This document shows, piece after piece, positions 21,227 to 49,544 of a stretch of DNA of 64,000 nucleotides. A model generated the notes under the pieces. The model saw only the letters and a list, made by a program, of their open reading frames with translations. It ran no database searches and was not told the DNA's origin. Numbering within the stretch: the stretch's first letter is position 1; each line of letters starts with the position of its first letter. The stretch spans positions 1 to 64,000 of the forward strand of contig CDMY01000315.1 of assembly GCA_001179505.1 (NCBI GenBank), written 5' to 3'. A program made the position numbers and the translations under genes. The DNA is from Vitrella brassicaformis CCMP3155. Taxonomy: Eukaryota; Protista; Chromerida.

Positions 21227-21265
<39 letters not shown>

Positions 21266-22574: not shown

Positions 22575-22605
<31 letters not shown>

Positions 22606-25600: not shown

Positions 25601-26817
25601 TCTGCGGCTTGATCTCTAACGCAGGATGCTCATCGACCAGCTCCTGTAAGATCAGACAATCGCGCACACAGGAGAGGGAGGGAGGGTTGGTGGCTGCACG
25701 GCACTGCACTCGTCTGTGTCTTTGCGCGGCAGAGACGCACCGACCGACCTGCATCTTGAACATCATGAAGTCGTTGAAGGACTCGGTCTGCTGGTACACC
25801 AGGCCCTTCTCGTGGAAGTACAAGTCGACCACGTGCCAAGGATCCTTTAAGGGACACACACACACACATCCATATCGATCCATCGATGTGTGTGGTCGCG
25901 AATCTCTCGCCGTTGTCCGTCCGGTGCGCTTACTTCGTTTTCGATCTCAGCTGAGTCGTCGATGCCCTCCTCCTCCTCGAGCTTCTCCTCGAGCAGGGTG
26001 GCCTCCAGGTCCTGGGCAGATAGATCAAATGCGATGGTGGGTTGGGAGGAGGGATACACACACACACAGCAGAGAGAGGGCCACTGCTTGCAGTGCGGTG
26101 GTCTGTTGCGTCATCACATCACGTAGACTCACCTCGTACTCCTCTTCCTCATCCTCTTCCAGATGATCCTCTGCACACACATCAACACAGACACACACAC
26201 ACACACGCATGGATCCCTCTGTCCTCTGTGACCAGACAGGTCAGACAGACGCGCAGTTTGCTGAGGCCGACTGACCTCGCTCTTGCTTGACATATTCGTC
26301 AGGCTGCAAGTCGTGCTGCTGCTCCCCGATGCCGCCGCCCATCTCCTGCTCGCCGAACAGGTCGTCGTCATCCTCATCACCGCCGCCACCCATACCGGGC
26401 TCACCACCTGTCGGACACGCACACACACCAGAATAGTCCCTCTCTCTCTCTCTCTCTCTCTCTCTGAGGGAGTGGCTGGGTCACCTGTTTGCTGCTGTTG
26501 CTGGTGCTGCTGGTGATCGCCATCTCCACCTCCATCACCGCCCTGCTCCTCCTCCTCACTGTCCAGCCTACACACACGCCAACACAACACAACACACAGC
26601 ACGTGACTGACGTGATACACACGCAGCACAGAAAGAGACAGACAACACAGACACCCATGACAGCCAGCCTCCGAGCTCACCCAAGGACGTCATGCTCCTC
26701 CTCTCCTTCATCTTCGTCCTCTTCATCTTCCTCGTCACCATGGCCGTACGGCGGCGGCACTGGCGGCGGGTAGCAGCCGCCTCCGCCGCCACCACCGGCG
26801 GCATAGGGATCAGCCAT
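18784..26817 (-). CDS. RPB2: DNA-directed RNA polymerase II second-largest subunit, about 30+ exons
   Basis: Spliced motifs [66 protein letters not shown]|[88 protein letters not shown] and [29 protein letters not shown]. Confidence 0.98.
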
Positions 26818-27957: not shown

Positions 27958-28469
27958 ATGATGCGCATCGTTCGTCCTTCAACGCTGCTGGGCCGCAGAT
28001 GCGGACAACAGCATCCGGCAACGTGTAGGCCACCCGCCCGGGACGCACACAGATCAGGTACACGGCGATTTTGTCTTCCTGTCTTTGCTCATCAGTCTGT
28101 CGGATGTTCTCATCCGCAACGTCGGCTACAGAGACCGCCAAGGCGGCCACACGAGTTGGCATCCGGGGTCGCCTCCTGTGGGGATCGGTGCTGGTCGGCG
28201 GCACCACCGTGGGGTTGAGGTGAGGGACAGAGAGAGAGAGAGAGAGAGAGATGTGCACACACGCACGGGGAACCACACGAGCACGCGACGGATCTGGCGT
28301 GTGTGTGTGCAGTGCTGGGAAGGGCTCTTCATCCAAGTTGGCATCAGAGGCCCTGATGAGAAGCGGTCAGAAGCCGGCACGCGTCTGCAGACTGTCCATC
28401 GCCGCTAACATTTTATATTCGCTCGGCGTATTTCCCCCTTCGCCGCTTCGCATCGATATCAGGTGCTAG
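27958..28469 (+). pseudogene. Partial duplicate of the Mic60 5' end (presequence plus TM), copy 1
   Basis: MMRIVRPSTLLGRRCGQQHPAT|FCRMFSSA..RVGIRGRLLWGSVLVGGTTVGL|SAGKGSSSKLASEALMRSG. Introns are homologous to Mic60 introns 1 and 2. Confidence 0.7.
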
Positions 28470-28752
28470 CTTCCAGAGGACGCCGCCTAGCATCCGGGGA
28501 AGGACGGGTGAGTTCGGGCAGGCCGACAGACGAGAAAGACAGTTATGCTTGCAGCCGTCTCATTCTTGCCTCTTTTCTTATTCACTGTCGTGTCTCTGTG
28601 TGTCTCTTCTCTCATTTCAGTCGCCTGACTGCATCGCCGCCTACATTTTATATGTCGACGGCAAGTGATCACAATCACAACCGCACCACACAGTGCCCTG
28701 ACGCCCAGCGAAGGAACAGTCGCACTTCTCACGAGGTGCATAGGATGCACAG

Positions 28753-29027
28753 ATGTACGTGACCAAGGCGAGAATGCGCATCTCGCGTCGGCCAATCACG
28801 CTGTTGGCCCGCGGCCGCGCGCCTCAACATGGTCCAACGGGTAGGCCACCCGCCCGACGCACACAGGTCTGGTACAAGGCGATTGTGTCTTCCTGTCTAT
28901 GCTCATCAGTTTCTCGGATGTTCTCGACCGCCCCGTCCATGAAGGAGACCGCTAGGGCGGCCGCAAGAAGGTGAGGGACAGAGAGAGAGACAGAGAGAGA
29001 GACAGAGAGAGAGACAGAGAGAGAGAC

Positions 29028-29058
<31 letters not shown>

Positions 29059-29673
29059 TGTGACACACACACACGGGGAACCACACGAGCACGCCATGGA
29101 TCTGATGTGTGTGTGTGCAGTCCTGGAATTCGGGGTCGCCTCCTGTGGGGATCGGTGCTGGTCGGCGGCACCACCGTGGGGTTGAGGTGAGGGACAGAGA
29201 GAGAGAGAGAGATATGTGCGCACACACACGGGGAACCACACGAGCACACGATGGATCTGGCGTGTGTGTGTGCAGTGGCGGGACGGGGTCTGCATTTAAG
29301 TTGACCCAAGAGGCGCTGATCAAAAGCGGTCAGAAGACGGCTGGTCAGAAGCTCGGCCCACTGCAGTCGCCAGGTGGGAGCAAAACAACCGCCAACCCTC
29401 ACATCCATCCATCCATCCACTCACACCGTACCCTGTGTGTTCATGTGTATGTCTGCAGGGGTGGCGCGAGTGTGCGGCTTTGACTACAATGTCGACCTCT
29501 CGTGCAAGGTGAGCACAGATGATAGATGGCCCAGGTGGCATGCTGCCCTTGTGGATTACATAACGTCCTCATGTCTCCGCTTGCCCTCAGATATCGCTGC
29601 CTTCATTTTATATTCGATGGGCTGATGACAAGCCTTCAACCGCACTGATTTGTCCCGCCGCGTGCACATCGAA
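28753..29673 (+). CDS. Mic60-derived chimeric ORF (presequence plus TM plus unrelated C-terminal exons), copy 2; 3' end unresolved
   Basis: The frame stays open across canonical GT-AG junctions: MYVTKARMRISRRPITLLARGRAPQHGPT|VSRMFSTAPSMKETARAAARS|PGIRGRLLWGSVLVGGTTVGLS|GGTGSAFKLTQEALIKSG|VARVCGFDYNVDLSCK|ISLPSFYIRW.. Confidence 0.5.
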
Positions 29674-30798
29674 GGTGAGCTGTCAAACAGACTTATCAAC
29701 TCGCGTGGGCCGCCCAGCAACTTGCCGACAAAGCAGGCTACACACTCACACAGAGCTCTGACACCCTGACTGCGGTGGCTCACTCTTTTGTGTGTGTGTG
29801 TGTGTGTGTGATGCGCATGTGCGTGGTTTCAAGGAGGTCAGTATGGCTGCATCACATCACACACACACACAGACATCAACACACGGTCCATCTGTCTGTG
29901 TGTGTGCCGTCTGCTGCCTAGGCCGGGCACCTTCGTTGGCTTGGTGATGAACTACTTGTCCTTCCCCGGCTCGAGCACGCCGGACACCTGCGCCACGCGC
30001 TTCATGGGCTGGTCAGACACACACACACATGCGCACAGAGCCACACACACATGGATGGTTGTGTGTGTCGTTCTCGTAGGAACCAGGTGTATCGTGTGCT
30101 GATGTGTGTGGTCGGGTCGGCACCTTCCTGCTGGTCGCCGCGGTCGCACTCATCCGCGTCGACGTACAGAGAGAGGGAGAGGCAGGCAGAGGTGAGCGGC
30201 CGGTACATACCTGTAGTCGATCCTCGCCGCACACCTGCATTGAGCTGCTCAGCCGCACACACCACATGGATGGATGGATGGATGGTGAGGGCAGGGGCGG
30301 GAGGGTGAGAGGGCGGAAGGACGGACTGACTGACCGGTGGGGTGTTTTTCTTTCAATGTGAATGTGCACACTACCCATGGCATGGCTGTGTGTCCCACAC
30401 ACCGACCCCCGGCCATCCATCGTGTCGCCCCATGTGCACTGCAGCACACCCATCATCACATAACTGATTTCAGCATGTCAAGTACAGTATACACACAACA
30501 CAAAATGGTCATTCATTCATGACGTGTCATGTATGTATGTATGTATGTACTTAATTTGTGTCCGTCTGCATGGTCAACAACGGTTCATCCCCGCTGCATG
30601 CGACACACCGCTCTCTGCGCAGAATTCATGCAACTACAATATCTGCGTCGCGTTCACGAATGTCACTCGTGGTCACGCCACTCACAGTTGTCTCAAAGGA
30701 CACTCGTGACTCTACGGACGCGTGTCTTTTGGGAGGGGGGAGGAGCAGTTCGTCCTCAAGCAAAGCTCGCAAAAGAATGAGCTCGCAATGCTTTCGCG

Positions 30799-32989
30799 AT
30801 GATGCGCATCCCACGTGCCTCAGTGATGCTGTTGGCCCGCGGCTGCGGGCCACAGCACCATCCAACGGGTAGGCCACCCGCCCGTGACGCACACAGATCT
30901 GGTACAAGGCGATTGTGTCTTCCTGTCTATGCTCATCAGTTTCTCAGATGTTTTCCACGGCGTGAGGACAGAGAGAGAGAGAGAGAGAGAGAGAGATGTG
31001 GACACACGGGGAAACACACGAGCACACGATAGGTCTGGTGTGTGTATGTGCAGTGCTCGCACGGGGTCTGCATCCAGGTTCTCGCAAGAGCCCCTGATAA
31101 AAACCGGTCAGAAGACGGCCTCCCCCCCTCCCCCTCCCCCGACCCCTCCCCCACCGCGTGTGCGTCCATGTGTGTGCGGTGTTTAGGCACGGTTGGCATC
31201 CGAAGTCGGCTAATGTGGGGCTCGGTTTTGCTTGGCGGCACCACCGTAGGGCTGTGGTGGGCCACGGATCGGATGGCCTTCCTCCGCAAGTACATCCAAG
31301 ACGAGTGAGTATAAGTATAGGGGAGGGAGGGAGGGGAGGCACTTGACAAGTAAGTGTTTGATGTATGTGTTGATGGATGTGTTGACTGACTGACAGCTAC
31401 CCTGGCGTGGCTGCCTTCATCGACAAGCCGGTGGAGAAGACGCTGTGGCCGTTTATGCTGCCCGAACACGAAAGAGGTCTGTCTGGTGTGCGTCGGTGTG
31501 TCTGTCGTGCCTGTCAATGAACGAATCTGTGTGTGTGTGTGTGTCTGTGTGTGTATGCAGTGCCGGAACCGGAACAGCTGCCTGGGTGGAGCGGCCCGCC
31601 GACGATGGTAACCCGGCGAGCTCAGCGACTTTGTTGACCTTGTCAATATATGTATTGGGGTGTGTGTGTGTGTGTGCGTGTGTTCCAGTCGATTGAAGAA
31701 GAAGAAGTCGAGGAAACACCGCCGGTAAGAAACACACGCAGGGGGCGCAGTTAGACTCACGCCCACCCTCACTCTCTGTCTGTCTGTCTGTCTGTCTGTG
31801 TGTCAATCCACCAGCCCCCGCAGCAAGGCAATGTGGCCGCTGGTATCCCTCAAGAAGAAGCAGAAGAAGAAGAGCAGCCTGAGGAGGCTGAAGGGGAGGA
31901 GGCCGTGGAGGGTGGAGAGGAGGAGGCGGCGGAGGGACCGGTAGAAGGAGAGAAGAAGGAGCCGACGGAGGGAGAGGAAGGCGACAAGGACGACAAGGCA
32001 GAACTTCCGCCTGAGGAGGGCTTCGGCGCTGAAGAAGGCAAGGACTCGGTTGAGGAGATCACAGAAGAGAAGAAACTGCCTAAGGAGCCTAAGCAGGTCC
32101 GTTTACATGTCATATGTCATAGGCCCTCACACACACACACACACACACAAACAGAGAGAGAGGGAGAGAGGGAGAGAGGGGGTGTGTGTGTACTGATTGG
32201 TCAGTACACTGACGAGGAGTTGAAGGAGGAGATGGCCGAGGTGATTCGCATGTGCGACGAAATGGACGAGGACACCAAGGCAAGAAAACCCACCACACAC
32301 CCACACACCCACCACCAGACACGCCCCTGCACACACACACACGCGCCTGTCTGCCTGTCTGTCTGCAGATGATATTTGGCATCTCTGAGATCCCCGACCT
32401 GCTGGCCAAGTTCGAGGCTCTCCCGCCCGACCAGAAGTGGGGACTCGGCATGATCACCGACGAAGAGCTGCGGGCCGCCACACAGAAGAACGTAAGTGTC
32501 CTGGGGTGTGCTGTGCACACACAGACACCCAGACAGACAGACAGACAGTCACCGAAAGAGAGAGACAAAGAGAGAGTTCTGTGGATGGATGGGTAATGGG
32601 TGCAGGTTGAGTCGCTGGAGGGCGGGATGGAACCAGCGAAGAAGGAGGTGAGCCCGCCCGATGCCGATGCCGATGCTGGGGCTGGTGCGGCTGGCGGTGC
32701 TGCTGACGATTTCGCGGGAGAGCCTCCTGCAGACGACGAGTTCAAGTGAGAGAGTGAGTTTGGAAGCTATGGACAGATGGACATGTGTGTGTGTGTGCAC
32801 AGGGGGCCGGGCAAACCCATTAGCGCTCTCGTGCGAACCATCGGTACGCTTGCACCTTCGCCCGCGCATGTGTGTGTGTGTGTGTGTGTGCGTGCAGTGG
32901 TTGACGACCCCTACCGTGACATTGCCGTGGAGGACGCCATCGAGGCCGAGAAGAGAGCCCTGCAGGACAAGGACAGGTATCTTCATGGG

Positions 32990-33038
<49 letters not shown>

Positions 33039-35478
33039 ACGAACACGCAGAGAGAGAACGAACACGCGAAGGCACACCTCTCTGTCTCCCTCTCCCTCTG
33101 TGTGTGTGTATCTGATGTGTGTAGAGATGGCGTCTTCGACCGCCTCATCGAAGTGGAAACCGAGCTTGTGCAGCACCGGTGCACACACGCACACACACAC
33201 ACGCAGAGAGAGAGAGAGAGAGAGAGATCGACACCACCCGGCTCTGATATCTGTCTGTCATTCGTGTGTGCAGCAAGTTCGTGAACCTGAAGATCGCAGA
33301 GGAGGTCCAGGCCATGCAGGAGGCGATGGAGCTCAAGTACAACCGCCACTTCGAAAAGATCATCGGCCACGCGACGGAAGTGGTACGTGTGCCTCACTGC
33401 ATACCCATCTCTCTGTGTTTGCGTGTGCGAGACGTCTCTCTCTCACTCTCTCTCCCCCTGTCTCTCTCTCTGTCCATGTGTGTGTGTGTGCGTGTGTGTG
33501 CAGGCGAAGGAAGAAACCCAGAAGGTCATCGAACGCGAGTGTATCCAGAAAATGAACCGCATGGAGGTGCGTCCGTGTGTGTGTGTGGCACACTGCGAAA
33601 GACAGACACACGTGTCTGTGAGTGCATTCCTGACTGGGTCTGTCCATGGCATGTGTGTGCAGATCGAGGCGATCCGCGAGAGAGAGGAGGCCATCAAGCA
33701 GCTAGACCACCGGTGCGGTGCCCTCCCACTGACCCACTCAGCCACTCACCGGATCACCTGCACACACACTCACCAAAACACACGTACTGCCTGTTGCTTC
33801 GTCCCGCAGCCACATGGAGCAAATGGAGGAGACGAAAGAACACTTCAGACAGGTCAGTCACACCATACCCAGACAGACAGACAGACAGACAGGTGCATTT
33901 CTGTCACTCTCTGTGTCTCTGTGTGTCCCTGTGTGTCCTATCGTATGCAGGAGTTCGAGAAGGAGAAGATGGCCAACGCCGCGAACATCTGCTGGGTGAG
34001 TGCGAGGGTGTGACGGTCTCTGTCCATGTCTCCGCGTATCGTTGTTTCATCTCTCTCTGTTTCCTTCTCTCTCTCTCGGTCGGTTCGGTCAGATGGACGG
34101 CCGCATGAAGACAATGGAAGAGGTAAGAACCCCTATCTGACTGTCTGTCTGTCTGTCTGCCACGCACAGAGAGGGAGGGAGGGAGGGAGGGAGAGAGACA
34201 AACTCATGTGTGTGTCGTCTTGTGTGTTGTGTGCAGGCGTTTGAGAAGGAGGCGGCCTCCAAGACTCGCGTCTGCAAGCTCAACAAGATCATCACAATCG
34301 TTACCACACTGCAAGAGGTACACACACACACACACACACGCACTCACTCACTGTGTATCGATCGATCGATCCATCAGCGGCTGGCGTGTTACCGGCCCAT
34401 CCGGAGGGACCTGGATCTGGTCATGGAAGTGGGAAGCGAAGACTCCGTCCTCAGCAGGTCAGCCGGCGCACACACACATCAACCGCCAGACAACACGACA
34501 ACAACACAACACACACATGTGTGTGGTCTGTCTGTCTGTCTGGGTGTGTTGTGTGCAGTGTGTTCGCGGAGCTGCCGGCGTCGTGCGTGCAGATGTGCGA
34601 GGAAGGGGTGCCCACACTCTCCGACATGAGGGTCAGCCGGCCACCAAGCCGCACTGCTTGTTATGTATCCGTCCTGTGTGTGTGTGTGTGTGTAGATGAC
34701 GTTTGAGAGTACTCTGCAGCGCGACTGCGTAAAGGCGGCCTTTGTGGGATCTCGAGTGGGGCTCCCCTGGCACTTCGCAGGTACGCACCTGCATGGCATG
34801 TGCTTTGTGTGCACCCAATCGACACAGACACAGACACACACACACACACACATGTGCTCTCTCTCTCTCTGTGTGCCTCTGTGCCTGTGTGTATATGTGA
34901 CAGCCAACGTCTTCTCCACGTTCTACATGGTGCAGAAGCGGCCGAGAAGCCACTACGACATCGACGTCGAGACCGAAGGCAAGTTGTGTCGCTGCACACA
35001 CACACGCACAGAGAGAGAGAGAGAAAGAGAGAAAGAAGGAGAGACCACATTACACGCTGTGCGTGTCTGTGTGTGTGTGTGCCCTGCAGCCGGCGGTGGC
35101 GAGCTGCGCATGAACCTCGACAACCTCAGCTCGGCCGCCTACTGGATCCAGCAAGGTACACCAGACGCACACATGGCAGCGCGAGTGCATTCCCCCGTTT
35201 CCTTGATTGACTGATGGATTGATGCAGGGGACTTCGACCGCGCCATTCGCCACCTGGACCGCCTCTCGAACGACAAGGCCCGCGAGATGGCGCAGGAGTG
35301 GGCCGTGAAGGTCAGAGACGTCATCTGCCTGCACCGGGCGATGGAGGTACGCCGCACCGACCCACTCACTCACACACGCACACACACACACACACACGTG
35401 TGCCTGCCTGCCTGCCCGCCATGTGTGCAGGTGCTGATATCACGTGTGGAGTGCCTGAATGCGAGTGTCCTGAACTGA
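30799..35478 (+). CDS. MIC60: MICOS subunit Mic60/mitofilin, multi-exon
   Basis: R/S/A-rich presequence MMRIPRASVMLLARG..|VSQMFSTAARTGSASRFSQ, a single TM (LMWGSVLLGGTTVGLWWA), an acidic linker and coiled coils. The C-terminal mitofilin-like domain reads NLDNLSSAAYWIQQG|DFDRAIRHLDRLSNDKAREMAQEWAVKVRDVICLHRAME|VLISRVECL. Confidence 0.85.
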
Positions 35479-36201
35479 GCTACAGCTGCCTGACTTTGCT
35501 TTGCTTTGTGCTTGCTTTGCTTTGCTGGGGAGGGATTCGACGCGACGCGTGTTTTGGCGTGTTTGGGTACATAGTCAGTGTGAGTGGATGGATCGATTTG
35601 TCAGCCGAGAGTGAGAGCACAAGCACACACACACACACAGTGTTTAAACCCATCCATCCATCATCTTTTTCGGTGTCTCGGCGGGTAGGGAGTTTGGATG
35701 CTGATGGTGCTGTAAAGGTCGGTGTGCGTGAGGGAGGGTGGGAGCGAGGGAGGGTGGGTGTGGACAATTGTGAGAGCACAGAGACGCACCATAGCTATTG
35801 GGCAAGACGAGCAATGTATGGGTAATGCAGACAGACACACGCCTCTGCTGGGGCAAATCATGATGCTGGCGATCGCTTAATCGGTACTCTCTCTACCTCT
35901 GTGTGTCCGTGTCTGTGGCGTGCTTATTCCCTCTCTCGCTCCCAATACTCTCTCGAGGAGTATTCACGTCGGTCAGCCTGTACAGCTACCTACACGGACG
36001 TACACGCAGATCGCATGCAGCACATGAACGTCATAGCCACATCCACCGCAACAGCAACCTGACAAACAATCATAGAAACACAAGCGCACCACAGCAGCAG
36101 TTCAGGGTTTGACAGCAGCAGTTCAGGGTTTGTTTCGGCGTTAGGGCTCAGGGCTCACCGGAAGGGTGTTCCCTGCTCCTTGTCAGCCCTCCGCTGGCGG
36201 G

Positions 36202-39200
36202 ATGGATAGAAATGATACCGTCGAGGTACGAGAAAGATGCACCCATCGGGTGGATGGGCACGCCGCATCCATCCATCCGTCCATCCATATCCATCGCTTC
36301 CTGGATCTGACTGTGCCGCAGGAGATCTCAGAGCTGTACTATTGCGAGGCGCATGATCGGTATCACTGCACCGTCCAATGGAGCTCGGTGTGCAGAAATA
36401 CGAAAGAGCACTGCACTCGGCGGTTTGTGTGACTTGCACTGGTGTGGGTGGTGCCCGTCCATCTGCTGACGGATGCTTGCAGGGCAAGACTACGCCGCGA
36501 GTATCTGTCAAGGAGCTCATCTGTAGCTGCCCATCGCAGGATGTCAGGGCTCTGATCAATGACGCCAAGAAGCGGGGGCTCCCGCTCATACCCCTGTCGG
36601 CACATGATGCCACATACAACATCAACGTAGGTGACACAATAAGGGAGGCGTCACAAACTCCCATCGCTGCAGCAATGGATTGGGATCCATGTGTGTGTGT
36701 GTGGTGCAGCGTGTTCTCGATGTTGATGAGCGCCGCCAGAAGCTGAGGGTGCATTGGGTGGGGGACACGCCCACGTGGGAGCCCTTCTCATGCGTCGAGG
36801 AGTTCCACAGACTTTGGTGGGTGGATGGGTGGGTGGGTGGGTGGGTGGGCCGACACATGCACCCTCTGTGTCATCTGACGTGTACGTGTGTGTGGTGTGG
36901 TGTGGTGTGGTGTGGTGTCAGGGGTAGCATCAAAGAGATTTTGTCGCTCATGAGGGCCCCGGGCGACGGTCCCGAGGCACTGGACCAAGATGGCGACGGT
37001 CCCGAGGAGAGCGACCAGACCGGCCCCACGTGTGCAGCCGGCTTCGACAGATCCATCCGCCACTCCAGGGACCAGTCGGACAATCCCTCCCTGCAGCAGC
37101 ATACCAACATCAAGACCCTACTGGACCTCCCGTCGTTGCCGCAGCTGTGCCGCACCTGCTGCAGTGGACATCGTGCGGTGAGGGCAGGCCCCACTTGCGT
37201 CGTCTGCTTGAGCTCCTGCGAGAGGGGCGGCAAGCCACCTGTCAAGTGCTCTCAGGTAGCAAGGGACAAGGGGTGAGAAAGATGGACACAAATGACAACG
37301 GCCATTGTGGAGCTGTTTGTGTGGTGCAGGAGGGCTGCGTGAGGTACTGGCACCCGGAGTGCTACCAAGAGGTCGTCCCATCTTTCATGCACACCTCCTC
37401 GCGGCCGTTCTGCCCCTCCAGCATCCACGCCTTCCCCGAGCAGGACGCCCCCGCAGCACATGGCGCGAGCTCATCCGCAGCCGCAGCGTCAGCCTCGGCG
37501 GCCAGCGCCACCGCCGCCCCGCGCTCTGTCTGCACGTCGGGTGATGGTCTACCCGACCACATGCGGCATCAGTATTGGGTTGTCGGCCCCATTGGACGGG
37601 ACGGCTGCAAGATGGTCGTGGTGCGTCTACCAGAGGGTCTGACTGTGCGAGGGGTGGCCAAGGCTGGCGAGAAGGAGACGGCGACGGTCGACGTCGACCT
37701 GGTGTATGAGAGTGGCGTGATGTCGTCGCTGGTGAACCCCTCCTCGCCTCACCCCTTCCCTCCCCCGCCACAGCTCATCGACATGGAGACCGACAAGCGG
37801 CCCCGACCCTTGCTTGGCCACTCGCTCCCCAAGCCCATCAAGGTGTCCCCATCCCAGCTGCTCTTCCCTGTCGACATGCATCATTGCGCCTGTGGCAGCG
37901 TGCAGTCGCCCTGCTCCGCGCACATTCAGGCCCCTCATCCCGCCTCTTCGCCCTATCCGCTTCGCGTCTACTGCAAGACCGTCATGATCCACCAAGAGGA
38001 GCAGGGCCAGACAACCGGGGGGGAGGGGGCGCCCCGCCGCTCAGTGCGGCTCGCATCCTCCCCCATCGACAGCCCCGAGGGATTTCTGCCCCCACAGTGG
38101 CGCCACACGGGTGTCACAGGCCTGTCGGCGGATTTTCAGTGGTCTCCTCACAGTGAGGGCTTCACGGGCATCCCGCCCATCGTGTGCCCCTCAAAAGAGG
38201 CCATCGAGCTCCTCAACGGCGGGACGAGGGCGTGCGAGGGCAAGAGGATCGACACCGATGAGTCCGCCACCACTTTGGATATCTTCGGTGGCATGGGGAA
38301 CGTGAGTGAGGCGATGCTGCGGGCGAAGAGGGAGTTCGGCTCTGGGGGCAAGCACATAGCCATAGACAAGAAGACCGTCTGTGCGACAGTCATCAAGGTG
38401 GGCAAGGACACACCACGGAGGGAGGGAGGGAGGGAGGGAGGGATTTTTTGTGCATTGTACCGTCCTTTGCTCGATCAGGAGGATGTGAAGCGTGGTGGTG
38501 GTGGTGGTGATGGCGGTGGCGGTGGCGTGGAGGTGTGGGAGGACAATGCGTTGGACATGTTCCGCATCATGACTGACCTGGCCAGAGGCGGGCCGGCGCA
38601 CGACGATCTCGCCAATTTGGATCGCGCGAAGCGGCTCCTGCCTTCTGTTGGCGTAGCCGACAGCACTGACGGCACAAGCAGCAGCAGCAGCAGCAGCAGC
38701 AGCGCGGCGGAGAGCGACAAGGCCATGGTGAGGGTGGCTGCCGCATGCCCTCCATGCCAGGTCAGCCAACAGAAACAGATAAATGGAGTCCGTATCTTCC
38801 TGTGTGTCAGTATTGATGGGTTGATGGGATGGATGTGTTAGGCCTTTACGAGTTTTGAGGAGATGCGCCGGGACGCGCCTGTTCACCATCCGCAGCTGCG
38901 TGTGCTCTTCATCGAGACCGTGCAGGCCATGATCATGATCGGAGCGCCGGTCGCTGTCATCGGTGGGCAAGTACAGTCAGCCAGCCAACAGCATGACGCA
39001 CGGGGGCTTAGGAACGTTCGGTTGGTTGGCGGATGCTGTGTGGGCCAGAGAATGTCATGGGCCTGGCTGAGTCCCCAAGGAACCGCCCTCTCTTCGAGCA
39101 GTGCATCGCCGATATCCTATCCGCTGGCGTAAGCATAGCATCGAAGATGTGCACACACCCACGAGCATCGGCAGACTTCACGTGTGTCTGTCCGTGTACC

Positions 39201-41071
39201 CATTATCAGCTGCAGTTCCGTTGTCTGGTGGTAAATGCTTCGGAGCACGGCTCTGCGGCGCATCGCAGGCGACTCGTAGCCATCATGGCGCAGCCCGGCT
39301 ACCCACTCCCAGGTACCACACACACATCCACCACACACATGCCCACACACATCACACATACGGTGTGTGCATGTGTGTGCAGAGCCGACTGTCATTGCGC
39401 CGTCGTCAGCCGCCGCCAGAGGGGATTCCGTCCTACTCGACGCCATCAACACGGTGCTTCAGGTCTACATCCACATGTACAACACGGAGACTCCTGACGC
39501 CAAGGCGTTTGTGCTCGCCGAGCTGCAACACTGGCCGTGGAACGTGTTCCACTACACGCTAAAGGAGGCGTGTGAGCATCGGCTGGCGCATGGCGAGCAC
39601 CCGATGACGGCCAGATACGCCAAGCTCAGCGAGCTGCTGGAAGGGGTACTTACATACGTGTGGTGTGTGTGTGGACACAAAGAGGGAGGCATGGGGGCAA
39701 GTGTCATCCTTCTCTCTCTGTTCGGTCCTGTCATATCCATGCATCAGGTAGCAAAGCGTGTGTGGCCTGCGGACGGTTTCCAGAGGCCGAAATGCAAGCC
39801 ACGCAAAGGTAGGTGGGGTGGACAGGCAGGGAGCTGACACACAGAGAGACAGGCAAAGCGGGAGGCGCTCACTCTCGTGCCCTGCTGTGCTGTGCTGTGC
39901 CGTGTTGCTGGATGATGGATTGATCAGGGAGTGATTGGGGCTGGGAGGAGTTGTTGAGTCCTGCCAACATGTCGGCATTGTGCGCCGAGCTCGAGATGGC
40001 CGCCCCCACACTCACCCGGCAGCCCCTCTCGCTCTCGTGGGTCAACGTCGACACACACGCGGAGACGGCGGCGGCGAGCGGTGATGGGGCAGCCGTCAAG
40101 GGCGTCAAGAGAAGAAAGACCACCCACCATTCCGCGCAGAAGTGCAAACACCCAGAAGTGCCCATGTAAGGATGGACAGACAAATCACATGTGTGTGTCG
40201 GGATGTCGCATTGTGGTGCGTGCCTGCAGGGCCGTTTGTGCCCAGCTTCAGGGAGTGCTGCACCGTCTCCCCCCACTGATGGCCCTGCTGAACTCCCAGC
40301 GCTGCGCTAATCTCGACGGCTGTGCCAAGACCCTCCTGAGGGACCTGCTGGGCAACGCCGTCAACATGGAGACGGCCGTGGATGTGACTCGCCCGCTCTT
40401 CCACTCACTCGCCCGCCGCGACTGCATCAGCCCACCCCAGGAAGTGCTCAACCAGCGGCTGGGCATCGTCACGCCCCCCCACACCGTGCTGCCCCCCCTC
40501 GCCAGACACCAGCCGCCATCGGCCGAGGAGATCGCCGACATGATGATGTTGCGTATCCCTCACAACAAGAATTGGGATCGCATTGTCGACTCCTTCAACA
40601 GCGGCAGCATGACACGGCTCCAAGAGGAGGACGAGGACGAGGACGACATCACCACACCAGCAGCGGCGGCGGCAGCCGCAGCGATGCCGGCTGACACGCC
40701 CCCCATGCACGACTGGGAGAACGACCCCGTGGAAGGGATGGGAGCAGGTAGGTAACATACGGACGGGCATGCAGGCAGTCGGGCCATACATATCATACTG
40801 TGGTGTATGTGTGCAGATGGTATGATGGCGGTGGATGAGGAGGGAGGTGGTGCTGTGCTCCAGGAGCCCCCGGCGCCCCCATCGCCCGGCCCCCTGGCGT
40901 CGCCCATGCCCCATACCCATGGACATACAGAGCCACGAACCTGCTGCAGGTGCCTGCCTTGCCTGGACGGCTACTAGACCGCACCACACGGGCCTGTGTA
41001 TGTATGTATGTTCAGGTGATGGTGATGAGCAGGATGGCGGCATCATTGCAGAGTATCCCGAAGATGAGTAG
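36202..41071 (+). CDS. C5-cytosine DNA methyltransferase with N-terminal chromodomain(s) and PHD-like finger
   Basis: Motif I LDIFGGMG (38275-38298), II AIDKK, IV ACPPCQ|AFTS (38746-38760), VI AVI|ENVMGL (39049), VIII NASEHGSAAHRRRL (about 39235-39275), IX-like CAQLQG and X LLGNAV (40345-40362). The chromodomain reads TYNIN|RVLDVDERRQKLRVHWVGDTPTWEPFSCVEEF. The PHD-like finger reads CVVC..KCSQ|EGCVRYWHPEC..FCPSSIH. Both ends are approximate. Confidence 0.9.
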
Positions 41072-41552: not shown

Positions 41553-43737
41553 TCAGGGATTGCGCGTTGCGTTCAATCCCAGCCAGACACGGCTGACGTA
41601 TAGGATTGCGAAGCCCTCGATGCTCCCGCCGTCAGGGAGGGAGGTCTCGATGGAAGCGAGCTGCTTAGCTGGCACGTGGTCAGGGAACAGCAGATCGACA
41701 CGTTGTAGCCCCTTGACGTGTGGGATCGCCGATGAGAGGCGGGCGCGCACCAGACTGCCCACATCCTCCACATCGTCCGGCACTGAAGCCAAACACACAC
41801 ACACACACACACACACAAGCCAACAAAGGACATAAAGACATAAAGTCCCTCTTCTCTCTCGGCGTACGTGTCAGCTTGAAGTATAGGCTCTCGATCGTCG
41901 GCAACCGGCCAGCCGCCTGGCCCAGCTGTTGATCTAGTTGGTCGAAAACTACGCTGCGCATCAAGACCTCCCGCACCTCCCTCCCCCTTCCGAGCGCCCT
42001 CAACACGCCCACCATCTCCTCACCACCCGACACCTCTCGAATGTCCACCTCTCTCACCTTCTCGGGCATCTTGTCGGCCAGCAGCCGGGCTGCAGCACCA
42101 CCCAGGTTGCTCCGGACAGACAGCGTTGGGGCTCTCTGGAAGACGTTCTGGAAGGGCTTCAGGTGGTCGATGATGGTAGGGTGGGGCGATGGGGTGTTGG
42201 CCGGGGGATGGAAGCCAGCGGCATTCTTGACCTCCACCGTCTCGGCCTTGTCGAATGAGAGTGTCTTGGCCGTGTCGATGGCCGCCTGGCTGGGGCTGTC
42301 GAGGTTGTCGGTGAGGTCGTCCTGAGTGAAGATGTATCCCACCGATGTGGCCTGCTGTGCCAGCTGCTGGATCATGGTCTTCACTGAGGGCGACGGGCGA
42401 GTGGGAAAGTCGACGTGGTGGAAGAGGGAGCGGCCAAAGGTGGGGTCTGTGGCGTAGAAGCTGAGTCGCACATTTGGCCGGCAGCATGTGGTGACCAGCC
42501 CGTTCAGGGCCAGCAGCAAAGGCAACGTGGGGCGGCCGATCTCGTAGAAGAAATCAAATTGCACGTGCAGAAGTTTAAGCGACCGCCGGCAGCCACGCGC
42601 CACGAGGACAGCCTGCAGACAACCAGACACACCCAGATACAGGAATGACATCTTCAACCAACCCACTGGCGCTGCTGTGCATGCGTGTGTGTTCTTGTCA
42701 CCTGCAGCCGGTCGATGCCCTCGCGATGCTCATCGGGACGGATAAAGCCGATGCGCTCTAGCTTGGCGAGTGGCCCCACCTGCTGCCCAGCAGGTGCCTG
42801 AGGGATGTGGCCGAATAAGCGCGCCCACTCGTCACCCCTGAACGCCCCGTCGACGTGCTGCAGTGAGCCCGACGAGCTGATGAATCGGCCCAATCTGTCA
42901 GGGTCCCAGCCCCTCTGCCGCAAGACGGTGAGCGAGGGCATCACCCAGCCCCGGTCGGCCATCCCCTGATGTCCGCTGGTCAGATACTCAATGGTGGTGA
43001 GTGCGTCGAGAAGTGGGGGCGGGTCGAGAAGATCGGGAAGGGGTGGGTCTGTCCTTGCGACGATCTGCCTCTCCTTGATGGTCAGCTGAGCCCCTTCTCG
43101 GATGGTGATTGTCTTCAGGGTCCCGTCTTGAATGTTGGCTGCCCGTCGGCCGGCGACGTGGCCCTCTATCATGGCCACAAACACGTCGAGGCACCAGCGG
43201 GGGAAGCAAGTGGGGCAGCGGAGGGTGATAGAGGTGACCTGCCTGAGGTATGTGGCCCATTCCGTGACGAGGTCGGTGGTCGTTGTCTCCGCCTGCCAGA
43301 ACGACCGCTCATCTTCGTCGGCTGCACTGATTGTGAGGTGGTGCTGCTTGCGGGCGGCGAGCTGCCATGTCAGCGGCGGCAGCTGCAGCTGTATCAGCAG
43401 GTGGAAGGGGAGGAAGGCCATGACGCTGCTGAGGAGACCGGGCTGCACACAACCACACAGCACACAGAGTGAGTAAGAGATGTCCACCAGTGCCTTCATG
43501 GCCTCAGTGTGTGAGAGACTCACTCACCGGAAGGATGCTCCCCCAATCACCACCACCACCACCACCACCACCACTACCCGCAGCAGCAGCCGGCGCCTCC
43601 TCACGGCGGGACTTCTTAGCCTCCACCCATCCAGCCAGCAAACACACACACACACACACACAGAGCCGACATCCATCTGTGGCCATTCATTGCAAGCGGT
43701 GCTGTGATGCCCTCACCTGCCTACCGTCGCCCTCCAT
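41553..43737 (-). CDS. Lineage-specific hypothetical protein (F-box-like start, LRR-like body)
   Basis: MEGDGRQ|..EAKKSRREEAP..|..SSVMAFLPFHLLIQLQLP..EWATYLRQVTSITL..MPSLTVL..LAKLERIG. It has long ORFs (42654-43523 and 41680-42666) and canonical introns. The domain call is tentative. Confidence 0.7.
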
Positions 43738-47015: not shown

Positions 47016-47794
47016 TCATTTGTCGGTCGCTGGCTGGCTGTCTCGTTGATGAATCTCCCTAAGCCACTCGGCCAGCAGGACGCCGCACGCACTGTGGTGG
47101 ATAAGGTGCTGGAAATACACAAAATTCGCATTGCCTACAGAGACACACACACACACACGGAGACACACACGGAGAGAGAGAGATGGGTGGCTGCACAATG
47201 AGTGTGTTATGGTGGGGTGTGTGTGTGTGTGTGTGTGTGTAGACCTACCTGTGTTTCTGTCCAGCCACAGACAGGCCATGACGGGCATGATCGACAGTGA
47301 CACACCTGGCCAGGTGCGGTGGGTGCACACAGCGGGACACACACACACACTGACATGTGGGCGCCCTCACGTGCTTACTTACTTGCCACGAGGACGATGA
47401 ACGAGAAGCTGCCGAGCCGACGGACGATGTCGTGATGCAGCAGCAGCAAACTCTGTCAACACACACCAAATGGACACACAGTGAGCTGTGTCGTCTTTGT
47501 GCAGATGTGCGCTTGGTTACTGACAATTAGATAAGCAAAGTCGCACACAGTGGGGTGCGGCTGGAACAGCACGACAATCTGCACACATAGTACAGTGCGC
47601 CGATCCGATCCGATCCACATGTGTGTGTCGTCCGTCCCGATCCAGCTCAGCTCACTTACGGCTATGTGCGCGGTGAGGAGTCCGTGCGGCTGGCGATAGA
47701 GATGCAGCCACAGAGGAATGACATACAAGTACACGTGACCCTGAACACACACACAAATGACACACACCGCATAGAATAGACAGGCGCCTGGCTC

Positions 47795-47827
<33 letters not shown>

Positions 47828-49544
47828 GGCCTTAATTGTCTGTCCACCAGCCAGCCATCGTTCCTGCCTGCCGTGCGTTGCGTTGCGTACGTTAAAGATG
47901 AAATGGAACATGTACTCGAAGCGATCGAATATCTGCGTGAAGAGGTACCAAAACAGACCGATGTTGGGCGTCAGCAAATCGACATCAGCGCCGCCTGCAG
48001 CCGCCCAACCATACACAACCAGAGCCATCCATCCATCCATCCACGAAGGCAGACGTTTCTGATCTCATCAGCTCTCTCTCTTGAGGTTCTGCGCACCAGG
48101 CCATGGTGTTGGTTTGTCCCCGAGTGTGTGTCTGATCCAGGCCTCGATCAGCGCGTAGAAGCCACACACGCCAATCAGGAAGCTCACTGACAGCAGACTG
48201 CACACACACACACACAGACGCAGAGACAGAGAGAGATCGAGATATACATGGGGAAATTCGATTCGTGTGTGTGAGTGCATCTACACTACACGGACATACA
48301 TGTATCTCTTCTCTGGGCCACAGGCAAATGTGTGCATGGCGGGGAGGACCACTGTGATGGCCATCAAGGGGTGAGACGACACCTGCAGCAGCACTGCCGC
48401 CTGCACACACAGACATCCATCCATCCATCCACAGGTAAGTGCAGATGGATGGATGTGTGTGTGTGTGGTGGGGTGGGGGGGAGGGGGCCGTACCAGTGGC
48501 ATGAGTATCCATCCGCTAGTGGCGAGCATCATCGAGTACACACATCGCGTAAAGGCCTGGAATGAAAGCGCCTGTGTTGACAGCACCTACGCACACGCAC
48601 ACACTTACACACGTGTGCATGCATCCACCTGTGCTCTGTCTGTCTGTGTACGAGGTGCATACTGTCAGTGGGTTGAGCAGATACGACGCAGCGACGAAGG
48701 ACGGGCCCAAATAGGGCACACCCTGCACACACACACACACGATGCACACACATCTCTGCTGTCTGTGTGTCGGCACACACAGGTCGTTCACAGAACAGGT
48801 GAGGGCGGGCGGGCAGGTCAGATTAGCATGGCTGTGTTGCGGTGTTTTCACCATATGCAGTGATGCATCAGACAGCAATTGAATTGAGAAGTTGGTGTTA
48901 TCATCATGTATGCCACGCCACGGCCCCCACACGCACTTGAGTGAGTGCACTGCTGACCTTTTGGTGCGCCCGGGCAGAGATCCACAGACACACGGCGATA
49001 CACACATCCACAGCTGACAGAACAACACAACACACACACAGGCATGCAACCAACATGCATTCATGTGTTCCTATGAGTGTGGTCACCGGTGAGCACCCAG
49101 AAAGTCATCTCTCTCTCCCCCTCTCTCTGCAAAGACACCCACACACAGGCCAACACATCCGGATGCATAAATCACTCCTTTTGTGTTGCTTGTATCGTGC
49201 TCACCGTATCCACAACACCCCCCGTGTGCTCAGAGAACCGCTCCAACGCCAGCAGCACTCGCGGAGATGACCCAATGACGGCCGACGCGACACCTGAGAA
49301 CACAAACTCAATCACAATCACACACACACACACACACAGAGAGGGATGTTGCCGGTGTGGGCTGACCGCCATGCTTTCTTGCGAAGGCGGTCTCCTTGAG
49401 CGAGTCGAATGTGTTGAGCCCGAAGAAGATGGCGCTGCCTGATGCCGACGCGCTGGAGTGGAAGAAGAGGAGAGCCCGGATGGCCACGCCGCATGCTGCA
49501 ATAGCCGCCAGGGACGCTGTGGACGATGACGCATTCATGCCCAT
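47016..49544 (-). CDS. PIGU: GPI transamidase subunit PIG-U (GAB1/CDC91), multi-exon
   Basis: Multi-TM protein with LLTPNIGLFWYLFTQIFDRF, HVYLYVIPL, FQPHPTVCDFAY and WLDRNTG|NANFVYFQ, matching the PIG-U PNxGLxWY and GNANF motifs. Confidence 0.9.

What the first reader, a model, noticed from the sequence alone, without database searches (positions are those of the whole stretch)
36202..41071. Chromodomain + PHD-like 'reader'-fused C5 DNA methyltransferase in an alveolate
Seen: one spliced ORF carries the C5-MTase motifs in canonical order (FGGMG, PPCQ, ENV, HRRR, LQG, GNAV). Three are completed only by splicing at canonical GT-AG sites, which argues for a real eukaryotic gene and not bacterial contamination. 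Upstream are a clear chromodomain and a C4HC-type finger. Established: apicomplexans generally retain only DNMT2; plant CMTs embed the chromodomain inside the catalytic domain and carry BAH; DNMT1/3/5 use CXXC-BAH, PWWP-ADD or SNF2 partners. Inference: chromo-PHD-DNMT does not match these families and may be an independently evolved histone-mark-guided DNA methylation system.
Basis: partly seen in the sequence, partly recalled or inferred. Interest (0 to 1): 0.92.

Follow-up and report, generated by a model that had tools for sequence, protein, structure and literature searches.

The report
Reader-fused cytosine methyltransferase gene, Vitrella
This is a real, intron-rich nuclear gene of the alga Vitrella brassicaformis, a close relative of malaria-type parasites, that joins two histone-reading-type modules to a very divergent DNA cytosine-methylating enzyme; the gene has no close relatives and a published survey missed it, but the design principle is already known.

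Summary
The spliced gene exists. Sixteen GT-AG exons (36202-41019, + strand) translate exactly to the public protein CEM01987.1 / A0A0G4EU92 (1181 aa) of Vitrella brassicaformis CCMP3155.

- **Methyltransferase:** Pfam DNA_methylase passes its threshold for motifs IV-VIII only. Motifs I and X are supported by position-restricted shuffle tests and a 45-sequence alignment. All catalytic residues are kept.
- **PHD finger:** borderline (PHD_NSD 24.1 bits against a cut-off of 23.9).
- **Chromodomain:** not "clear". Pfam and PDB searches do not see it. Only a signature pattern and UniProt's name support it.
- **One gene:** a single 1068-nt exon holds both the second half of the PHD finger and motif I.
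- **Relatives:** none close in billions of proteins. The best-scoring ones are ~370-aa bacterial "AACPPCQGFS" C5-methyltransferases (up to 43.7 bits), against Neurospora DIM2 at 23.9 and DNMT1 at about 12. Those bacterial enzymes themselves match DNMT1 best, so the domain belongs to the DNMT1-like class but is unplaced within it.
- **Precedents:** N-terminal chromodomain-DNMT fusions (Cryptococcus Dnmt5, diatom DNMT4) and a PHD-DNMT fusion (raphidophytes) are published.

Verdict: a new variant of a known kind, of moderate interest, with function untested.

The parts
36202..41019 (+). Whole coding region. The 16 exons are 36202-36225, 36322-36387, 36483-36626, 36710-36816, 36922-37255, 37330-38397, 38479-38760, 38842-38962, 39049-39128, 39210-39312, 39383-39645, 39748-39808, 39928-40165, 40230-40747, 40817-40949 and 41016-41019.
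   Evidence: The translation of these exons equals P0001 / CEM01987.1 exactly. All introns are GT-AG.
36609..36949 (+). Chromo-like module, residues 73-123, split by introns 3 and 4. The string is YNINRVLDVDERRQKLRVHWVGDTPTWEP followed by a predicted helix.
   Evidence: The loosened chromodomain regex matched in 0 of 20000 shuffles. UniRef names the protein 'Chromo domain-containing protein'. The single-sequence AF2 model shows beta-beta-helix here at pLDDT 54-64. Pfam Chromo and PDB searches are negative.
37148..37428 (+). PHD-type zinc finger, residues 190-258, split by intron 5. Ligand pattern: CVVC-x13-C-x4-C-x4-H-x2-C ... C-x4-H, with an extra CRTCC upstream.
   Evidence: Pfam PHD_NSD scores 24.1 bits (cut-off 23.9) on residues 185-275 and 19-20 bits in longer contexts. 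Weak PDB hits: a PHD finger (1wev) and a RING-CH domain. The C4HC regex matched in 4 of 20000 shuffles.
37429..38256 (+). Linker of about 275 aa, residues 259-534, with no recognisable domain. It lies in the same exon as the PHD C-terminal half and motif I.
   Evidence: No Pfam hit. The ORF is continuous over 37030-38841.
38257..40428 (+). C5 cytosine methyltransferase domain, residues 535-1030, spread over exons 6-14, with large insertions.
   Evidence: Pfam PF00145 at 28-30 bits. Bacterial-subfamily HMM at 60 bits. Colinear alignment A5. AF2 with that alignment gives a core pLDDT of 70-94, and the Foldseek top hits are MET1, ZMET2, DNMT1 and DIM2.
38284..38298 (+). Motif I, FGGMG (F544-G548), the AdoMet-binding loop.
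   Evidence: F544, G546 and G548 are invariant columns in A5. The sub-HMM hit at 535-553 was equalled in the window by 4 of 3000 shuffles.
38492..38703 (+). Low-complexity insertion between motifs I/II and IV. The poly-Gly run comes from a GTGGCG repeat and the poly-Ser run from nine AGC copies.
   Evidence: Tandem repeat finder. pLDDT is below 50 here.
38746..38760 (+). Motif IV, CPPCQ (C671-Q675), with catalytic Cys674. It is the last codons of exon 7.
   Evidence: Pfam, DIM2 and HaeIII alignments. Invariant in A5.
38962..39056 (+). Motif VI, ENV (E716-V718). The Glu codon is split by intron 8 (G | AG).
39261..39272 (+). Motif VIII, HRRR (H760-R763). R761 and R763 correspond to the RxR arginines. 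The usual Gln is Ala759.
   Evidence: DIM2 alignment. A5 invariant columns and the list of changed columns.
40002..40016 (+). APTLT (910-914), aligned with the PSPTIT landmark of the target-recognition region in the bacterial relatives.
   Evidence: A5 alignment. T912 and T914 are kept.
40149..40254 (+). HPE (959-961) followed by motif IX, CAQLQG (967-972), joined across intron 13. A second candidate, CANLDG, lies at 989-994.
   Evidence: H959 and P960 are invariant in A5. The alternative placements are seen.
40351..40362 (+). Motif X, GNAV (1005-1008).
   Evidence: G1005, N1006 and A1007 are kept in A5. The sub-HMM hit at 1002-1021 was equalled in the window by 137 of 3000 shuffles.
40429..41019 (+). 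C-terminal tail, residues 1031-1181: acidic, Ala/Pro-rich, with no domain. The 3' end of the model is uncertain.
   Evidence: No Pfam hit. Alternative terminal exons give different ends.

Best explanation
The locus is one nuclear protein-coding gene of Vitrella brassicaformis (CEM01987.1, 1181 aa). From N to C terminus the product has a divergent chromo-like module, a PHD-type zinc finger, a linker of about 275 aa with no recognisable domain, and a highly divergent but catalytically intact-looking C5 cytosine methyltransferase domain of the DNMT1-like class.

Most likely mechanism (inferred, not shown): the N-terminal reader modules dock on modified or unmodified histone H3 tails. By analogy this would be methyl-lysine for the chromo-like module and H3K4 or another tail state for the PHD finger. 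Docking concentrates or activates the methyltransferase on marked chromatin, such as repeats or heterochromatin, where it transfers methyl groups from AdoMet to cytosine C5 through Cys674, Glu716 and Arg761/763.

Origin: the catalytic domain is an orphan. Its best-scoring relatives are small bacterial 'AACPPCQGFS...ENVPGLA' methyltransferases, which are themselves the bacterial group most like DNMT1. It is therefore either an independent bacterial acquisition that later gained introns and reader modules, or an extremely fast-evolving offshoot of the eukaryotic DNMT1/DIM-2/DNMT4 stock.
For: Gene and architecture (shown):
- The exon model equals the public protein.
- There are 15 GT-AG introns.
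- One exon links the PHD half to motif I.
- The neighbours are ordinary.

Methyltransferase (shown):
- PF00145 scores above its cut-off.
- The bacterial-subfamily HMM scores 60 bits.
- P0001 keeps 32 of the 60 columns that are at least 95% conserved in the bacterial relatives, including every catalytic one. It keeps only 17-23% of the weakly conserved columns.
- Motif I is supported at 4 of 3000 shuffles and motif X at 137 of 3000.
- The AF2 core is confident, and Foldseek returns only C5 methyltransferases at the top.

Class (shown):
- Single-sequence scores are L009 43.7 bits, DIM2 23.9, HaeIII 13.6 and DNMT1 about 12. 62 of 80 bacterial ORFs score above DIM2.
- The profile of the bacterial group hits DNMT1 best, at 209 bits.
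- P0001 falls inside the starred clade of that group relative to Dcm-type outgroups, on a very long branch.

Readers: PHD_NSD at 24.1 bits; chromo-like signature and the UniProt name.

Precedents for the mechanism: CMT3/ZMET2, DIM2 and Dnmt5.
Against: - No activity, methylome or transcript data are available.
- The chromo-like module fails Pfam and PDB sequence tests, and at the third aromatic-cage position it has Asp97 where HP1 has an aromatic residue (manual alignment from memory).
- The AF2 model of the N-terminus is low confidence (pLDDT 48) and its Foldseek matches are meaningless.
- The target-recognition region is largely unrecognisable. The Arg-Glu of motif IX and the Gln of motif VIII are changed.
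- The AF2 model of the methyltransferase was guided by the alignment, so it is not independent evidence.
- There are no orthologues, so selection cannot be measured.
- The comparison between bacteria and eukaryotes is biased. The bacterial set was picked by similarity, PDB lacks DNMT4 and DNMT6, and my large-database searches could not see proteins shorter than 650 aa.
Confidence: 0.6

Rival explanations
1. It is a very divergent member of the SAR 'DNMT4' group (the diatom and Vitrella CEM15752 clade). Some members of that group already carry an N-terminal chromodomain, so the architecture would be an elaboration (plus PHD) of a described family rather than an independent invention.
For: - Nine diatom DNMT4 proteins have N-terminal chromodomains.
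- Vitrella has a DNMT4-type gene.
- DIM2, which is in the DNMT1 superfamily, is the best PDB hit and shares the 'A.PG.PLP.P' string after motif VIII.
- By eye, motifs IV-VIII of F. cylindrus DNMT4 OEU08290 are about 27% identical to P0001, including G.Q.R....NA.E.G.
Against: - Bacterial relatives score higher: 33-36% identity and up to 43.7 bits.
- Vitrella's own DNMT4, CEM15752, is only about 18% identical by eye.
- A BLAST-based survey that recovered CEM15752 did not recover this protein.
- Motif IV (AACPPCQ) and motif VI (ENV.GLA, PLF) match the bacterial consensus rather than SPCQGSS / ENVLGM.
- This was not testable computationally here.
Confidence: 0.25
2. The methyltransferase domain is a decayed or re-purposed pseudo-enzyme. 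The protein would act as a chromatin scaffold or reader, or would methylate a substrate other than DNA cytosine.
For: - Extreme divergence: branch length about 10 and only 23-25% identity to its nearest relatives.
- Microsatellite-derived insertions lie inside the fold.
- The target-recognition region is mostly unalignable. Motif IX lacks Arg-Glu and motif VIII lacks Gln.
- It is a singleton with no orthologue.
Against: - Every residue known to be needed for catalysis and cofactor binding is retained: FxGxG, PC, ENV, RxR and GN.
- Retention is concentrated in the most conserved columns: 53% against about 20%. That is the pattern expected under continued selection for catalysis.
Confidence: 0.2
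3. The gene model is an annotation chimera of two adjacent genes, a reader protein and a methyltransferase.
For: - No transcript data were available to me.
- The N-terminal exons are short.
- Exon 2 has two possible in-frame donors and the 3' end is uncertain.
Against: - Exon 6 (1068 nt, no stop) contains the PHD ligands C228/H233/C236 and also motifs I-II.
- The first half of the PHD finger sits in the same exon (exon 5) as the end of the chromo-like helix.
- Phase is kept across all 15 junctions.
Confidence: 0.04
4. The methyltransferase is bacterial contamination or belongs to a transposable element.
For: The best-scoring relatives are bacterial. Chromodomains are common in Ty3/gypsy integrases (from my own knowledge).
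Against: - The catalytic domain is interrupted by eight spliceosomal-type introns.
- GC content and microsatellites match the rest of the contig.
- No called gene within 10 kb has a reverse transcriptase, integrase or transposase domain hit.
- The protein cluster is a singleton, with no other member in the protein collection.
Confidence: 0.02

Closest known systems
Bacterial C5 DNA methyltransferases of the 'AACPPCQGFS / ENVPGLA / VYGRM.WD.PSPTIT / GRFGHPE..R.ISLREAALLQTFP' type (about 370 aa; Alphaproteobacteria, Chloroflexota, CPR, Actinomycetota and prophage or viral contigs). This may be the M.NgoFVII-like group that Aravind and colleagues regard as the source of DNMT1; I did not test that identity.
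   Same: - These are the best-scoring relatives of the catalytic core: up to 43.7 bits pairwise and 60 bits with an HMM.
- They are colinear over the whole domain.
- They share AACPPCQ.F, ENV.GLA, PLF, RRRL, PT.T, HPE and GNA.
   Different: - They are single-domain proteins without introns.
- P0001 has large insertions, a mostly unrecognisable target-recognition region, about 23% overall identity and N-terminal eukaryotic reader modules.
- No specific donor lineage could be resolved.
Neurospora DIM2 and the DNMT1 superfamily (DNMT1, MET1, CMT/ZMET2)
   Same: - DIM2 is the best PDB sequence hit (E=7e-5), including the PG.PLP.P string after motif VIII.
- MET1, ZMET2, DNMT1 and DIM2 are the top Foldseek hits.
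- Conceptually, all are enzymes coupled to H3K9 methylation.
   Different: - P0001 has no RFTS, CXXC or BAH domain.
- The chromo-like module is N-terminal, not embedded as in CMT.
- Pairwise scores to DNMT1 are only about 12 bits.
Diatom DNMT4 with an N-terminal chromodomain (for example Thalassiosira miniscula; Hoguin et al. 2023) and raphidophyte DNMT1-like enzymes with a PHD finger
   Same: - Both have a reader domain N-terminal to a DNMT1/4-type catalytic domain, in a SAR lineage.
- Core identity to F. cylindrus DNMT4 is about 27% by eye.
   Different: - P0001 combines a chromo-like module and a PHD finger, and has a long linker.
- Membership of that clade was not testable here.
- Bacterial relatives score better.
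Cryptococcus neoformans Dnmt5
   Same: It has an N-terminal chromodomain that reads H3K9me3, placed ahead of a C5 methyltransferase domain.
   Different: - Dnmt5 needs its C-terminal RING and SNF2 ATPase. P0001 ends after the methyltransferase and has no such domains.
- The Dnmt5 structure 7r76 is the weakest PDB match to the A5 profile, at 32 bits.

Membership tests
C5 cytosine methyltransferase (Pfam PF00145 / dcm superfamily) | Profile score above the curated threshold | tested here: met
   PF00145 scores 28.1-30.1 bits against a cut-off of 22, on motifs IV-VIII only. NCBIfam TIGR00675 scores 23.4 bits, far below its full-length cut-off of 100.65.
C5 cytosine methyltransferase (Pfam PF00145 / dcm superfamily) | Catalytic Pro-Cys (motif IV), ENV (motif VI) and RxR (motif VIII) in order and at canonical spacing | tested here: met
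   C674, E716, R761 and R763 are aligned in the Pfam, DIM2 and HaeIII alignments and in the 45-sequence alignment.
C5 cytosine methyltransferase (Pfam PF00145 / dcm superfamily) | AdoMet-binding motifs I (FxGxG) and X (GNxV) | tested here: met
   Motif I was equalled in the window by 4 of 3000 shuffles. Motif X is weaker, at 137 of 3000. Both are invariant columns in A5.
C5 cytosine methyltransferase (Pfam PF00145 / dcm superfamily) | Methyltransferase fold | tested here: inconclusive
   AF2 with alignment A5 gives pTM 0.58 and a core pLDDT of 70-94. The Foldseek top 50 are all C5 methyltransferases. The model was driven by the homologue alignment, so this is not independent.
C5 cytosine methyltransferase (Pfam PF00145 / dcm superfamily) | Cytosine-C5 methylation activity on DNA | not testable with these tools
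   Needs an enzyme assay or a methylome.
Chromodomain (PF00385) | Profile match | tested here: not met
   No Chromo hit at E<=10 on the full length or on residues 60-130. No chromodomain in PDB at E<=10. UniRef nevertheless names the protein 'Chromo domain-containing protein'.
Chromodomain (PF00385) | Three-strand plus C-terminal helix fold with an aromatic cage | tested here: inconclusive
   Single-sequence AF2 gives beta-beta-helix at pLDDT 54-64, but the overall pLDDT is 48 and Foldseek is uninformative (SUV39H1 chromodomain at rank 25, E=3.7). By manual alignment Y75 and W94 are present and the third cage position is Asp97. The beta2-beta3 loop is 3 residues shorter than in HP1.
PHD finger | C4HC3 zinc-ligand pattern and a profile match | tested here: inconclusive
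   The pattern C206-x2-C209-x13-C223-x4-C228-x4-H233-x2-C236 is present (4 of 20000 shuffles). The last ligand pair would be the atypical C253-x4-H258. PHD_NSD scores 24.1 bits against 23.9 on the isolated segment and 19-20 bits otherwise.
Chromomethylase (CMT) | Chromodomain embedded inside the catalytic domain, plus an N-terminal BAH domain | tested here: not met
   The chromo-like module is at residues 73-123 and motif I is at 544. There is no BAH hit.
DNMT1 / DIM-2 | RFTS, (CXXC) and tandem BAH domains N-terminal to the methyltransferase | tested here: not met
   None is found by Pfam at E<=10. Only the catalytic core resembles DIM2, at 23.9 bits.
DNMT3 | PWWP and ADD domains, and a PC(N) type motif IV | tested here: not met
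   No PWWP or ADD hit. Motif IV is PPCQ. No DNMT3 structure appears among PDB hits at E<=10.
DNMT5 | C-terminal RING and SNF2 ATPase | tested here: not met
   The protein ends about 150 aa after motif X and has no such hits.
SAR-type DNMT4 (diatoms, Vitrella CEM15752) | Phylogenetic placement of the catalytic domain inside that clade | not testable with these tools
   No DNMT4 sequence could be obtained. By-eye identity is about 27% to OEU08290 and about 18% to CEM15752.
Transposon-borne DNMT | Reverse transcriptase, integrase or recombinase in the same element | tested here: not met
   No called gene within 10 kb has a reverse transcriptase, integrase or recombinase domain hit. Those with hits are Rpb2 and PIG-U.

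The most novel reading that the evidence does not exclude
In the chromerid lineage a bacterial DNMT1-like methyltransferase was captured independently of DNMT1, CMT, DNMT4 and DNMT5. It then gained introns and was fused to chromo- and PHD-type histone readers. This would be a separate, convergent invention of histone-mark-guided cytosine methylation in the closest photosynthetic relatives of Apicomplexa, and it would be active in vivo.
Probability: 0.25. Interest if true: 0.7.

Novelty: new variant of a known kind. Interest (0 to 1): 0.5.

Why it matters
Chromerids are the free-living sister group of apicomplexan parasites. A published survey of DNMTs that included Vitrella listed only a DNMT4-type gene and one other accession whose family I did not determine, and it missed this protein.

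If the enzyme is active, Vitrella would have a second cytosine methylation route that is coupled to chromatin. It would also be another example of the repeated wiring of bacterial-type methyltransferases to histone readers. Aravind and colleagues count more than 10 independent acquisitions of DNA methylases by eukaryotes.

The case also shows that BLAST-based inventories under-count fast-evolving DNMTs. The significance is limited because the gene is an orphan, so it says little about the apicomplexan ancestor, and because the design principle is already well known.

Tried and rejected
1. Pfam and PDB searches on single ORF pieces found nothing, because the domains are split by introns.
2. The word-index homologue searches (three regions) returned only the protein itself. 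They were limited to proteins of 332-1055 aa or 650-2067 aa and were probably swamped by low-complexity words. They could not have seen the 370-aa bacterial relatives or short eukaryotic DNMTs.
3. The exhaustive phmmer search of 1.84 billion representatives with residues 226-675 found only the protein itself. It did not cover motifs VI-X.
4. A metagenome scan with unique peptides found nothing. A genome scan with Dcm-derived patterns also found nothing.
5. Pairwise phmmer against E. coli Dcm gave no significant alignment.
6. A five-sequence generic HMM did not make motifs I and X significant on their own. The subfamily HMM with a position window did better.
7. Single-sequence AF2 of residues 55-275 gave pLDDT 48, and its Foldseek hits were meaningless.
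8. A tree of P0001 with bacterial and viral relatives put P0001 on a saturated branch (length 10) in an unresolved basal position, so no donor can be named.
9. Searching the Funabiki alignment for 'CPPCQ' found nothing.
No tree with eukaryotic families could therefore be built.
11. Contamination, transposon and chimera readings were rejected, as set out under the rival explanations.

Full report
**What is there.** The window has about 57-60% G+C and is rich in (AC)n microsatellites. On the + strand between 36202 and 41019, short GT-AG introns of 56-119 nt join 16 exons into one open reading frame.

The translation is identical, residue for residue, to a protein that an exhaustive phmmer search of 1.84 billion representatives returned as its only hit. 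That protein is P0001 = CEM01987.1 = UniRef100_A0A0G4EU92, named 'Chromo domain-containing protein', from Vitrella brassicaformis CCMP3155, contig CDMY01000315.1. Window coordinates equal contig coordinates.

Among the called genes within 10 kb, those with a domain hit are an RNA polymerase Rpb2 gene and PIG-U; the rest are unannotated. None has a reverse transcriptase or integrase hit.

**The methyltransferase.** On the full protein, Pfam DNA_methylase scores 28.1 bits (30.1 on the isolated domain; cut-off 22). It aligns only residues 669-776, which are motifs IV to VIII. Pieces of the gene taken exon by exon match nothing, and E. coli Dcm does not align significantly. The domain is very divergent.

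I seeded pattern scans with motif IV and motif VI. These recovered four bacterial-type methyltransferases from metagenomes, seven more from viral contigs, and 168 from bacterial genomes, of which 80 were kept. The genome and viral hits, and the best metagenome hit (L003), form a coherent family of about 370 aa. Its consensus reads AACPPCQGFS ... ENVPGLA ... VPQRRRRL ... VYGRM.WD.PSPTIT ... GRFGHPE..R.ISLREAALLQTFP ... IGNALP.

- An HMM of 44 of these sequences scores 60 bits on P0001 residues 657-804.
- In a 45-sequence MAFFT alignment, P0001 is colinear over the whole domain. It shares the invariant columns F544/G546/G548 (motif I), C671-P-P-C-Q675-x-F677 (IV), E716-N-V718 (VI), R761/R763 (VIII), H959-P960 and G1005/A1007 (X). 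It also aligns APTLT with PSPTIT.
- P0001 keeps 32 of the 60 columns that are at least 95% conserved in the bacterial sequences, but only 17-23% of the weakly conserved ones. Every catalytic residue is kept.
- In sub-HMM tests restricted to the expected window, the motif I hit was equalled by 4 of 3000 shuffles and the motif X hit by 137 of 3000.
- AlphaFold2 with this alignment gives a confident core (pLDDT 70-94) and disordered insertions. Foldseek returns only C5 methyltransferases, led by MET1, ZMET2, DNMT1 and DIM2. That model depends on the alignment.
- The insertions between motifs I and IV are partly microsatellite-derived poly-Gly and poly-Ser runs.
A second candidate, CANLDG, lies 20 residues downstream.

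**The reader modules.** The PHD-type finger (residues about 190-258) has the pattern C-x2-C-x13-C-x4-C-x4-H-x2-C. Only 4 of 20000 shuffles reproduce it. Pfam PHD_NSD reaches 24.1 bits against a cut-off of 23.9 on the isolated segment, and 19-20 bits in longer contexts. PDB gives only weak PHD and RING-CH hits.

The chromodomain is the weakest part of the observation. Pfam Chromo does not match even at E<=10. No chromodomain in PDB matches. The single-sequence AlphaFold model has pLDDT 48 and its Foldseek hits are uninformative.

Three things support it:
- The string Y-x-I-x2-V-L-D ... L-x-V-x-W-x-G-x3-T-W-E-P matched a loosened chromodomain pattern in 0 of 20000 shuffles. The pattern was chosen post hoc.
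- The model shows a beta-beta-helix arrangement at that place.
- UniProt's automatic name calls it a chromo domain protein.

By manual alignment to HP1 (from memory), two of the three aromatic-cage positions are present (Y75, W94). The third is Asp97, and the beta2-beta3 loop is three residues shorter.

**One gene or two.** Exon 6 (37330-38397) is a single stop-free stretch. It contains the last PHD ligands (C228, H233, C236) and motifs I-II of the methyltransferase. Exon 5 contains the end of the chromo-like helix and the first PHD ligands. The reader modules and the enzyme are therefore physically one reading frame, and only the exon 3/4 and 4/5 junctions depend on splicing. I had no transcript data.

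**Which family.** With the same phmmer settings and database size, the scores against P0001 were:

| Comparison | Bits |
|---|---|
| Best bacterial relative (L009) | 43.7 |
| Median of the 80 bacterial ORFs | 26.9 |
| Neurospora DIM2 (best PDB hit) | 23.9 |
| M.HaeIII | 13.6 |
| DNMT1 | about 12 |

62 of the 80 bacterial ORFs score above DIM2. No DNMT3, DNMT2, DNMT5, CMT or DRM structure was listed at E<=10.

The profile of the bacterial family matches mammalian DNMT1 best of everything in PDB (209 bits). It then matches MET1, a prophage enzyme, HaeIII and ZMET2. This fits the published view that DNMT1 descends from an M.NgoFVII-like bacterial methylase and that eukaryotes acquired DNA methylases from bacteria more than ten times. 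I did not test whether this bacterial family is that same group.

In a tree with bacterial and viral relatives and Dcm-type outgroups, P0001 lies inside the starred clade of this family. Its branch length is about 10 and its position is unresolved. The domain belongs to the DNMT1-like class in the broad sense, and I cannot place it further.

Two readings remain: independent capture of a bacterial gene, or a runaway offshoot of the eukaryotic DNMT1/DIM-2/DNMT4 stock. Motifs IV and VI look bacterial (AACPPCQ, ENV.GLA, PLF). The string after motif VIII (AQPGYPLPEP) looks like DIM2 and DNMT1.

By eye, from a published alignment, motifs IV-VIII are about 27% identical to F. cylindrus DNMT4, about 25% to human DNMT1 and about 18% to Vitrella's own DNMT4-type protein CEM15752. 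The tblastn figure for the bacterial relatives is 33-36%. These by-eye numbers carry little weight.

**What is known already.**
- The protein is in public databases and carries a weak precomputed PF00145 hit.
- Neither of its accessions appears in any searchable paper.
- A 2023 DNMT survey that included Vitrella lists CEM15752 and CEM37813 but not this protein.
- Reader-fused DNMTs are well known. CMT3/ZMET2 have chromo plus BAH. DIM2 and DNMT1 read H3K9me3 and H4K20me3 through RFTS and BAH domains.
- Cryptococcus Dnmt5 has an N-terminal chromodomain that reads H3K9me3.
- Nine diatom DNMT4 proteins have an N-terminal chromodomain, and raphidophyte DNMT1-like enzymes have a PHD finger.
- I did not find the combination of chromo-like module, PHD finger and DNMT in an alveolate described anywhere.

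**Verdict.** However, the chromodomain is weak, precedents for N-terminal reader-DNMT fusions exist, the family placement is open and function is untested.

The most likely mechanism is reader-guided cytosine-C5 methylation of marked chromatin, at about 0.6 confidence. The architecture and the intact catalytic motifs are shown. Histone binding, DNA methylation and targeting are inferred.

I rate this a new variant of a known kind, with interest 0.5.

Noticed in passing
window 38398-38478, 38761-38841, 39129-39209: Introns 6, 7 and 9 of the gene are each exactly 81 nt. Intron 6 is in frame and has no stop codon, so retaining it would insert 27 aa between motifs II and III. This could be an alternative isoform or a coincidence.
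   Followed up: partly
window 36388-36426: Exon 2 has a second in-frame GT donor 39 nt downstream of the annotated one. Using it would add 13 residues rich in Cys and His (VCRNTKEHCTRRF) after YYCEAHDRYHC. This may be a small extra zinc-binding motif that the annotation misses.
   Followed up: partly
window 36091-36132: A perfect 21-bp tandem duplication (ACAGCAGCAGTTCAGGGTTTG, two copies) lies about 70 bp upstream of the start codon. It could be a promoter-proximal element.
   Followed up: no
window 38492-38535 and 38677-38703: Coding microsatellites (a GTGGCG repeat and nine AGC copies) produce the poly-Gly and poly-Ser runs inside the methyltransferase fold, between motifs I/II and IV.
   Followed up: partly
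window 40237-40320 (residues 967-994): Two motif-IX-like strings lie 20 residues apart, CAQLQG and CANLDG. Different alignments choose different ones.
   Followed up: partly
window ~20900-26800, - strand: An RNA polymerase second-largest subunit gene (Rpb2 domains 1-7; 1334 aa in the public annotation) with many introns. One exon at 20925-21749 matches Rpb2 domains 5 and 6.
   Followed up: partly
window ~47016-49538, - strand: A gene whose product matches PIG-U, a GPI transamidase subunit.
   Followed up: no
window ~41553-43737, - strand, and ~27958-35478, + strand: The flanking annotated genes (609 aa downstream; 287 aa and 728 aa upstream) have no Pfam family. They are lineage-specific unknowns next to the methyltransferase gene.
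   Followed up: no
window ~5100-5700 and ~17900-18300: Runs of N (scaffold gaps) in the assembly.
   Followed up: no
L007-L093 (bacterial and viral loci): The bacterial 'AACPPCQGFS' methyltransferase family is spread across Alphaproteobacteria, Chloroflexota, CPR, Actinomycetota and viral or prophage contigs. As a profile it matches mammalian DNMT1 (209 bits) better than any bacterial enzyme in PDB.
   Followed up: partly
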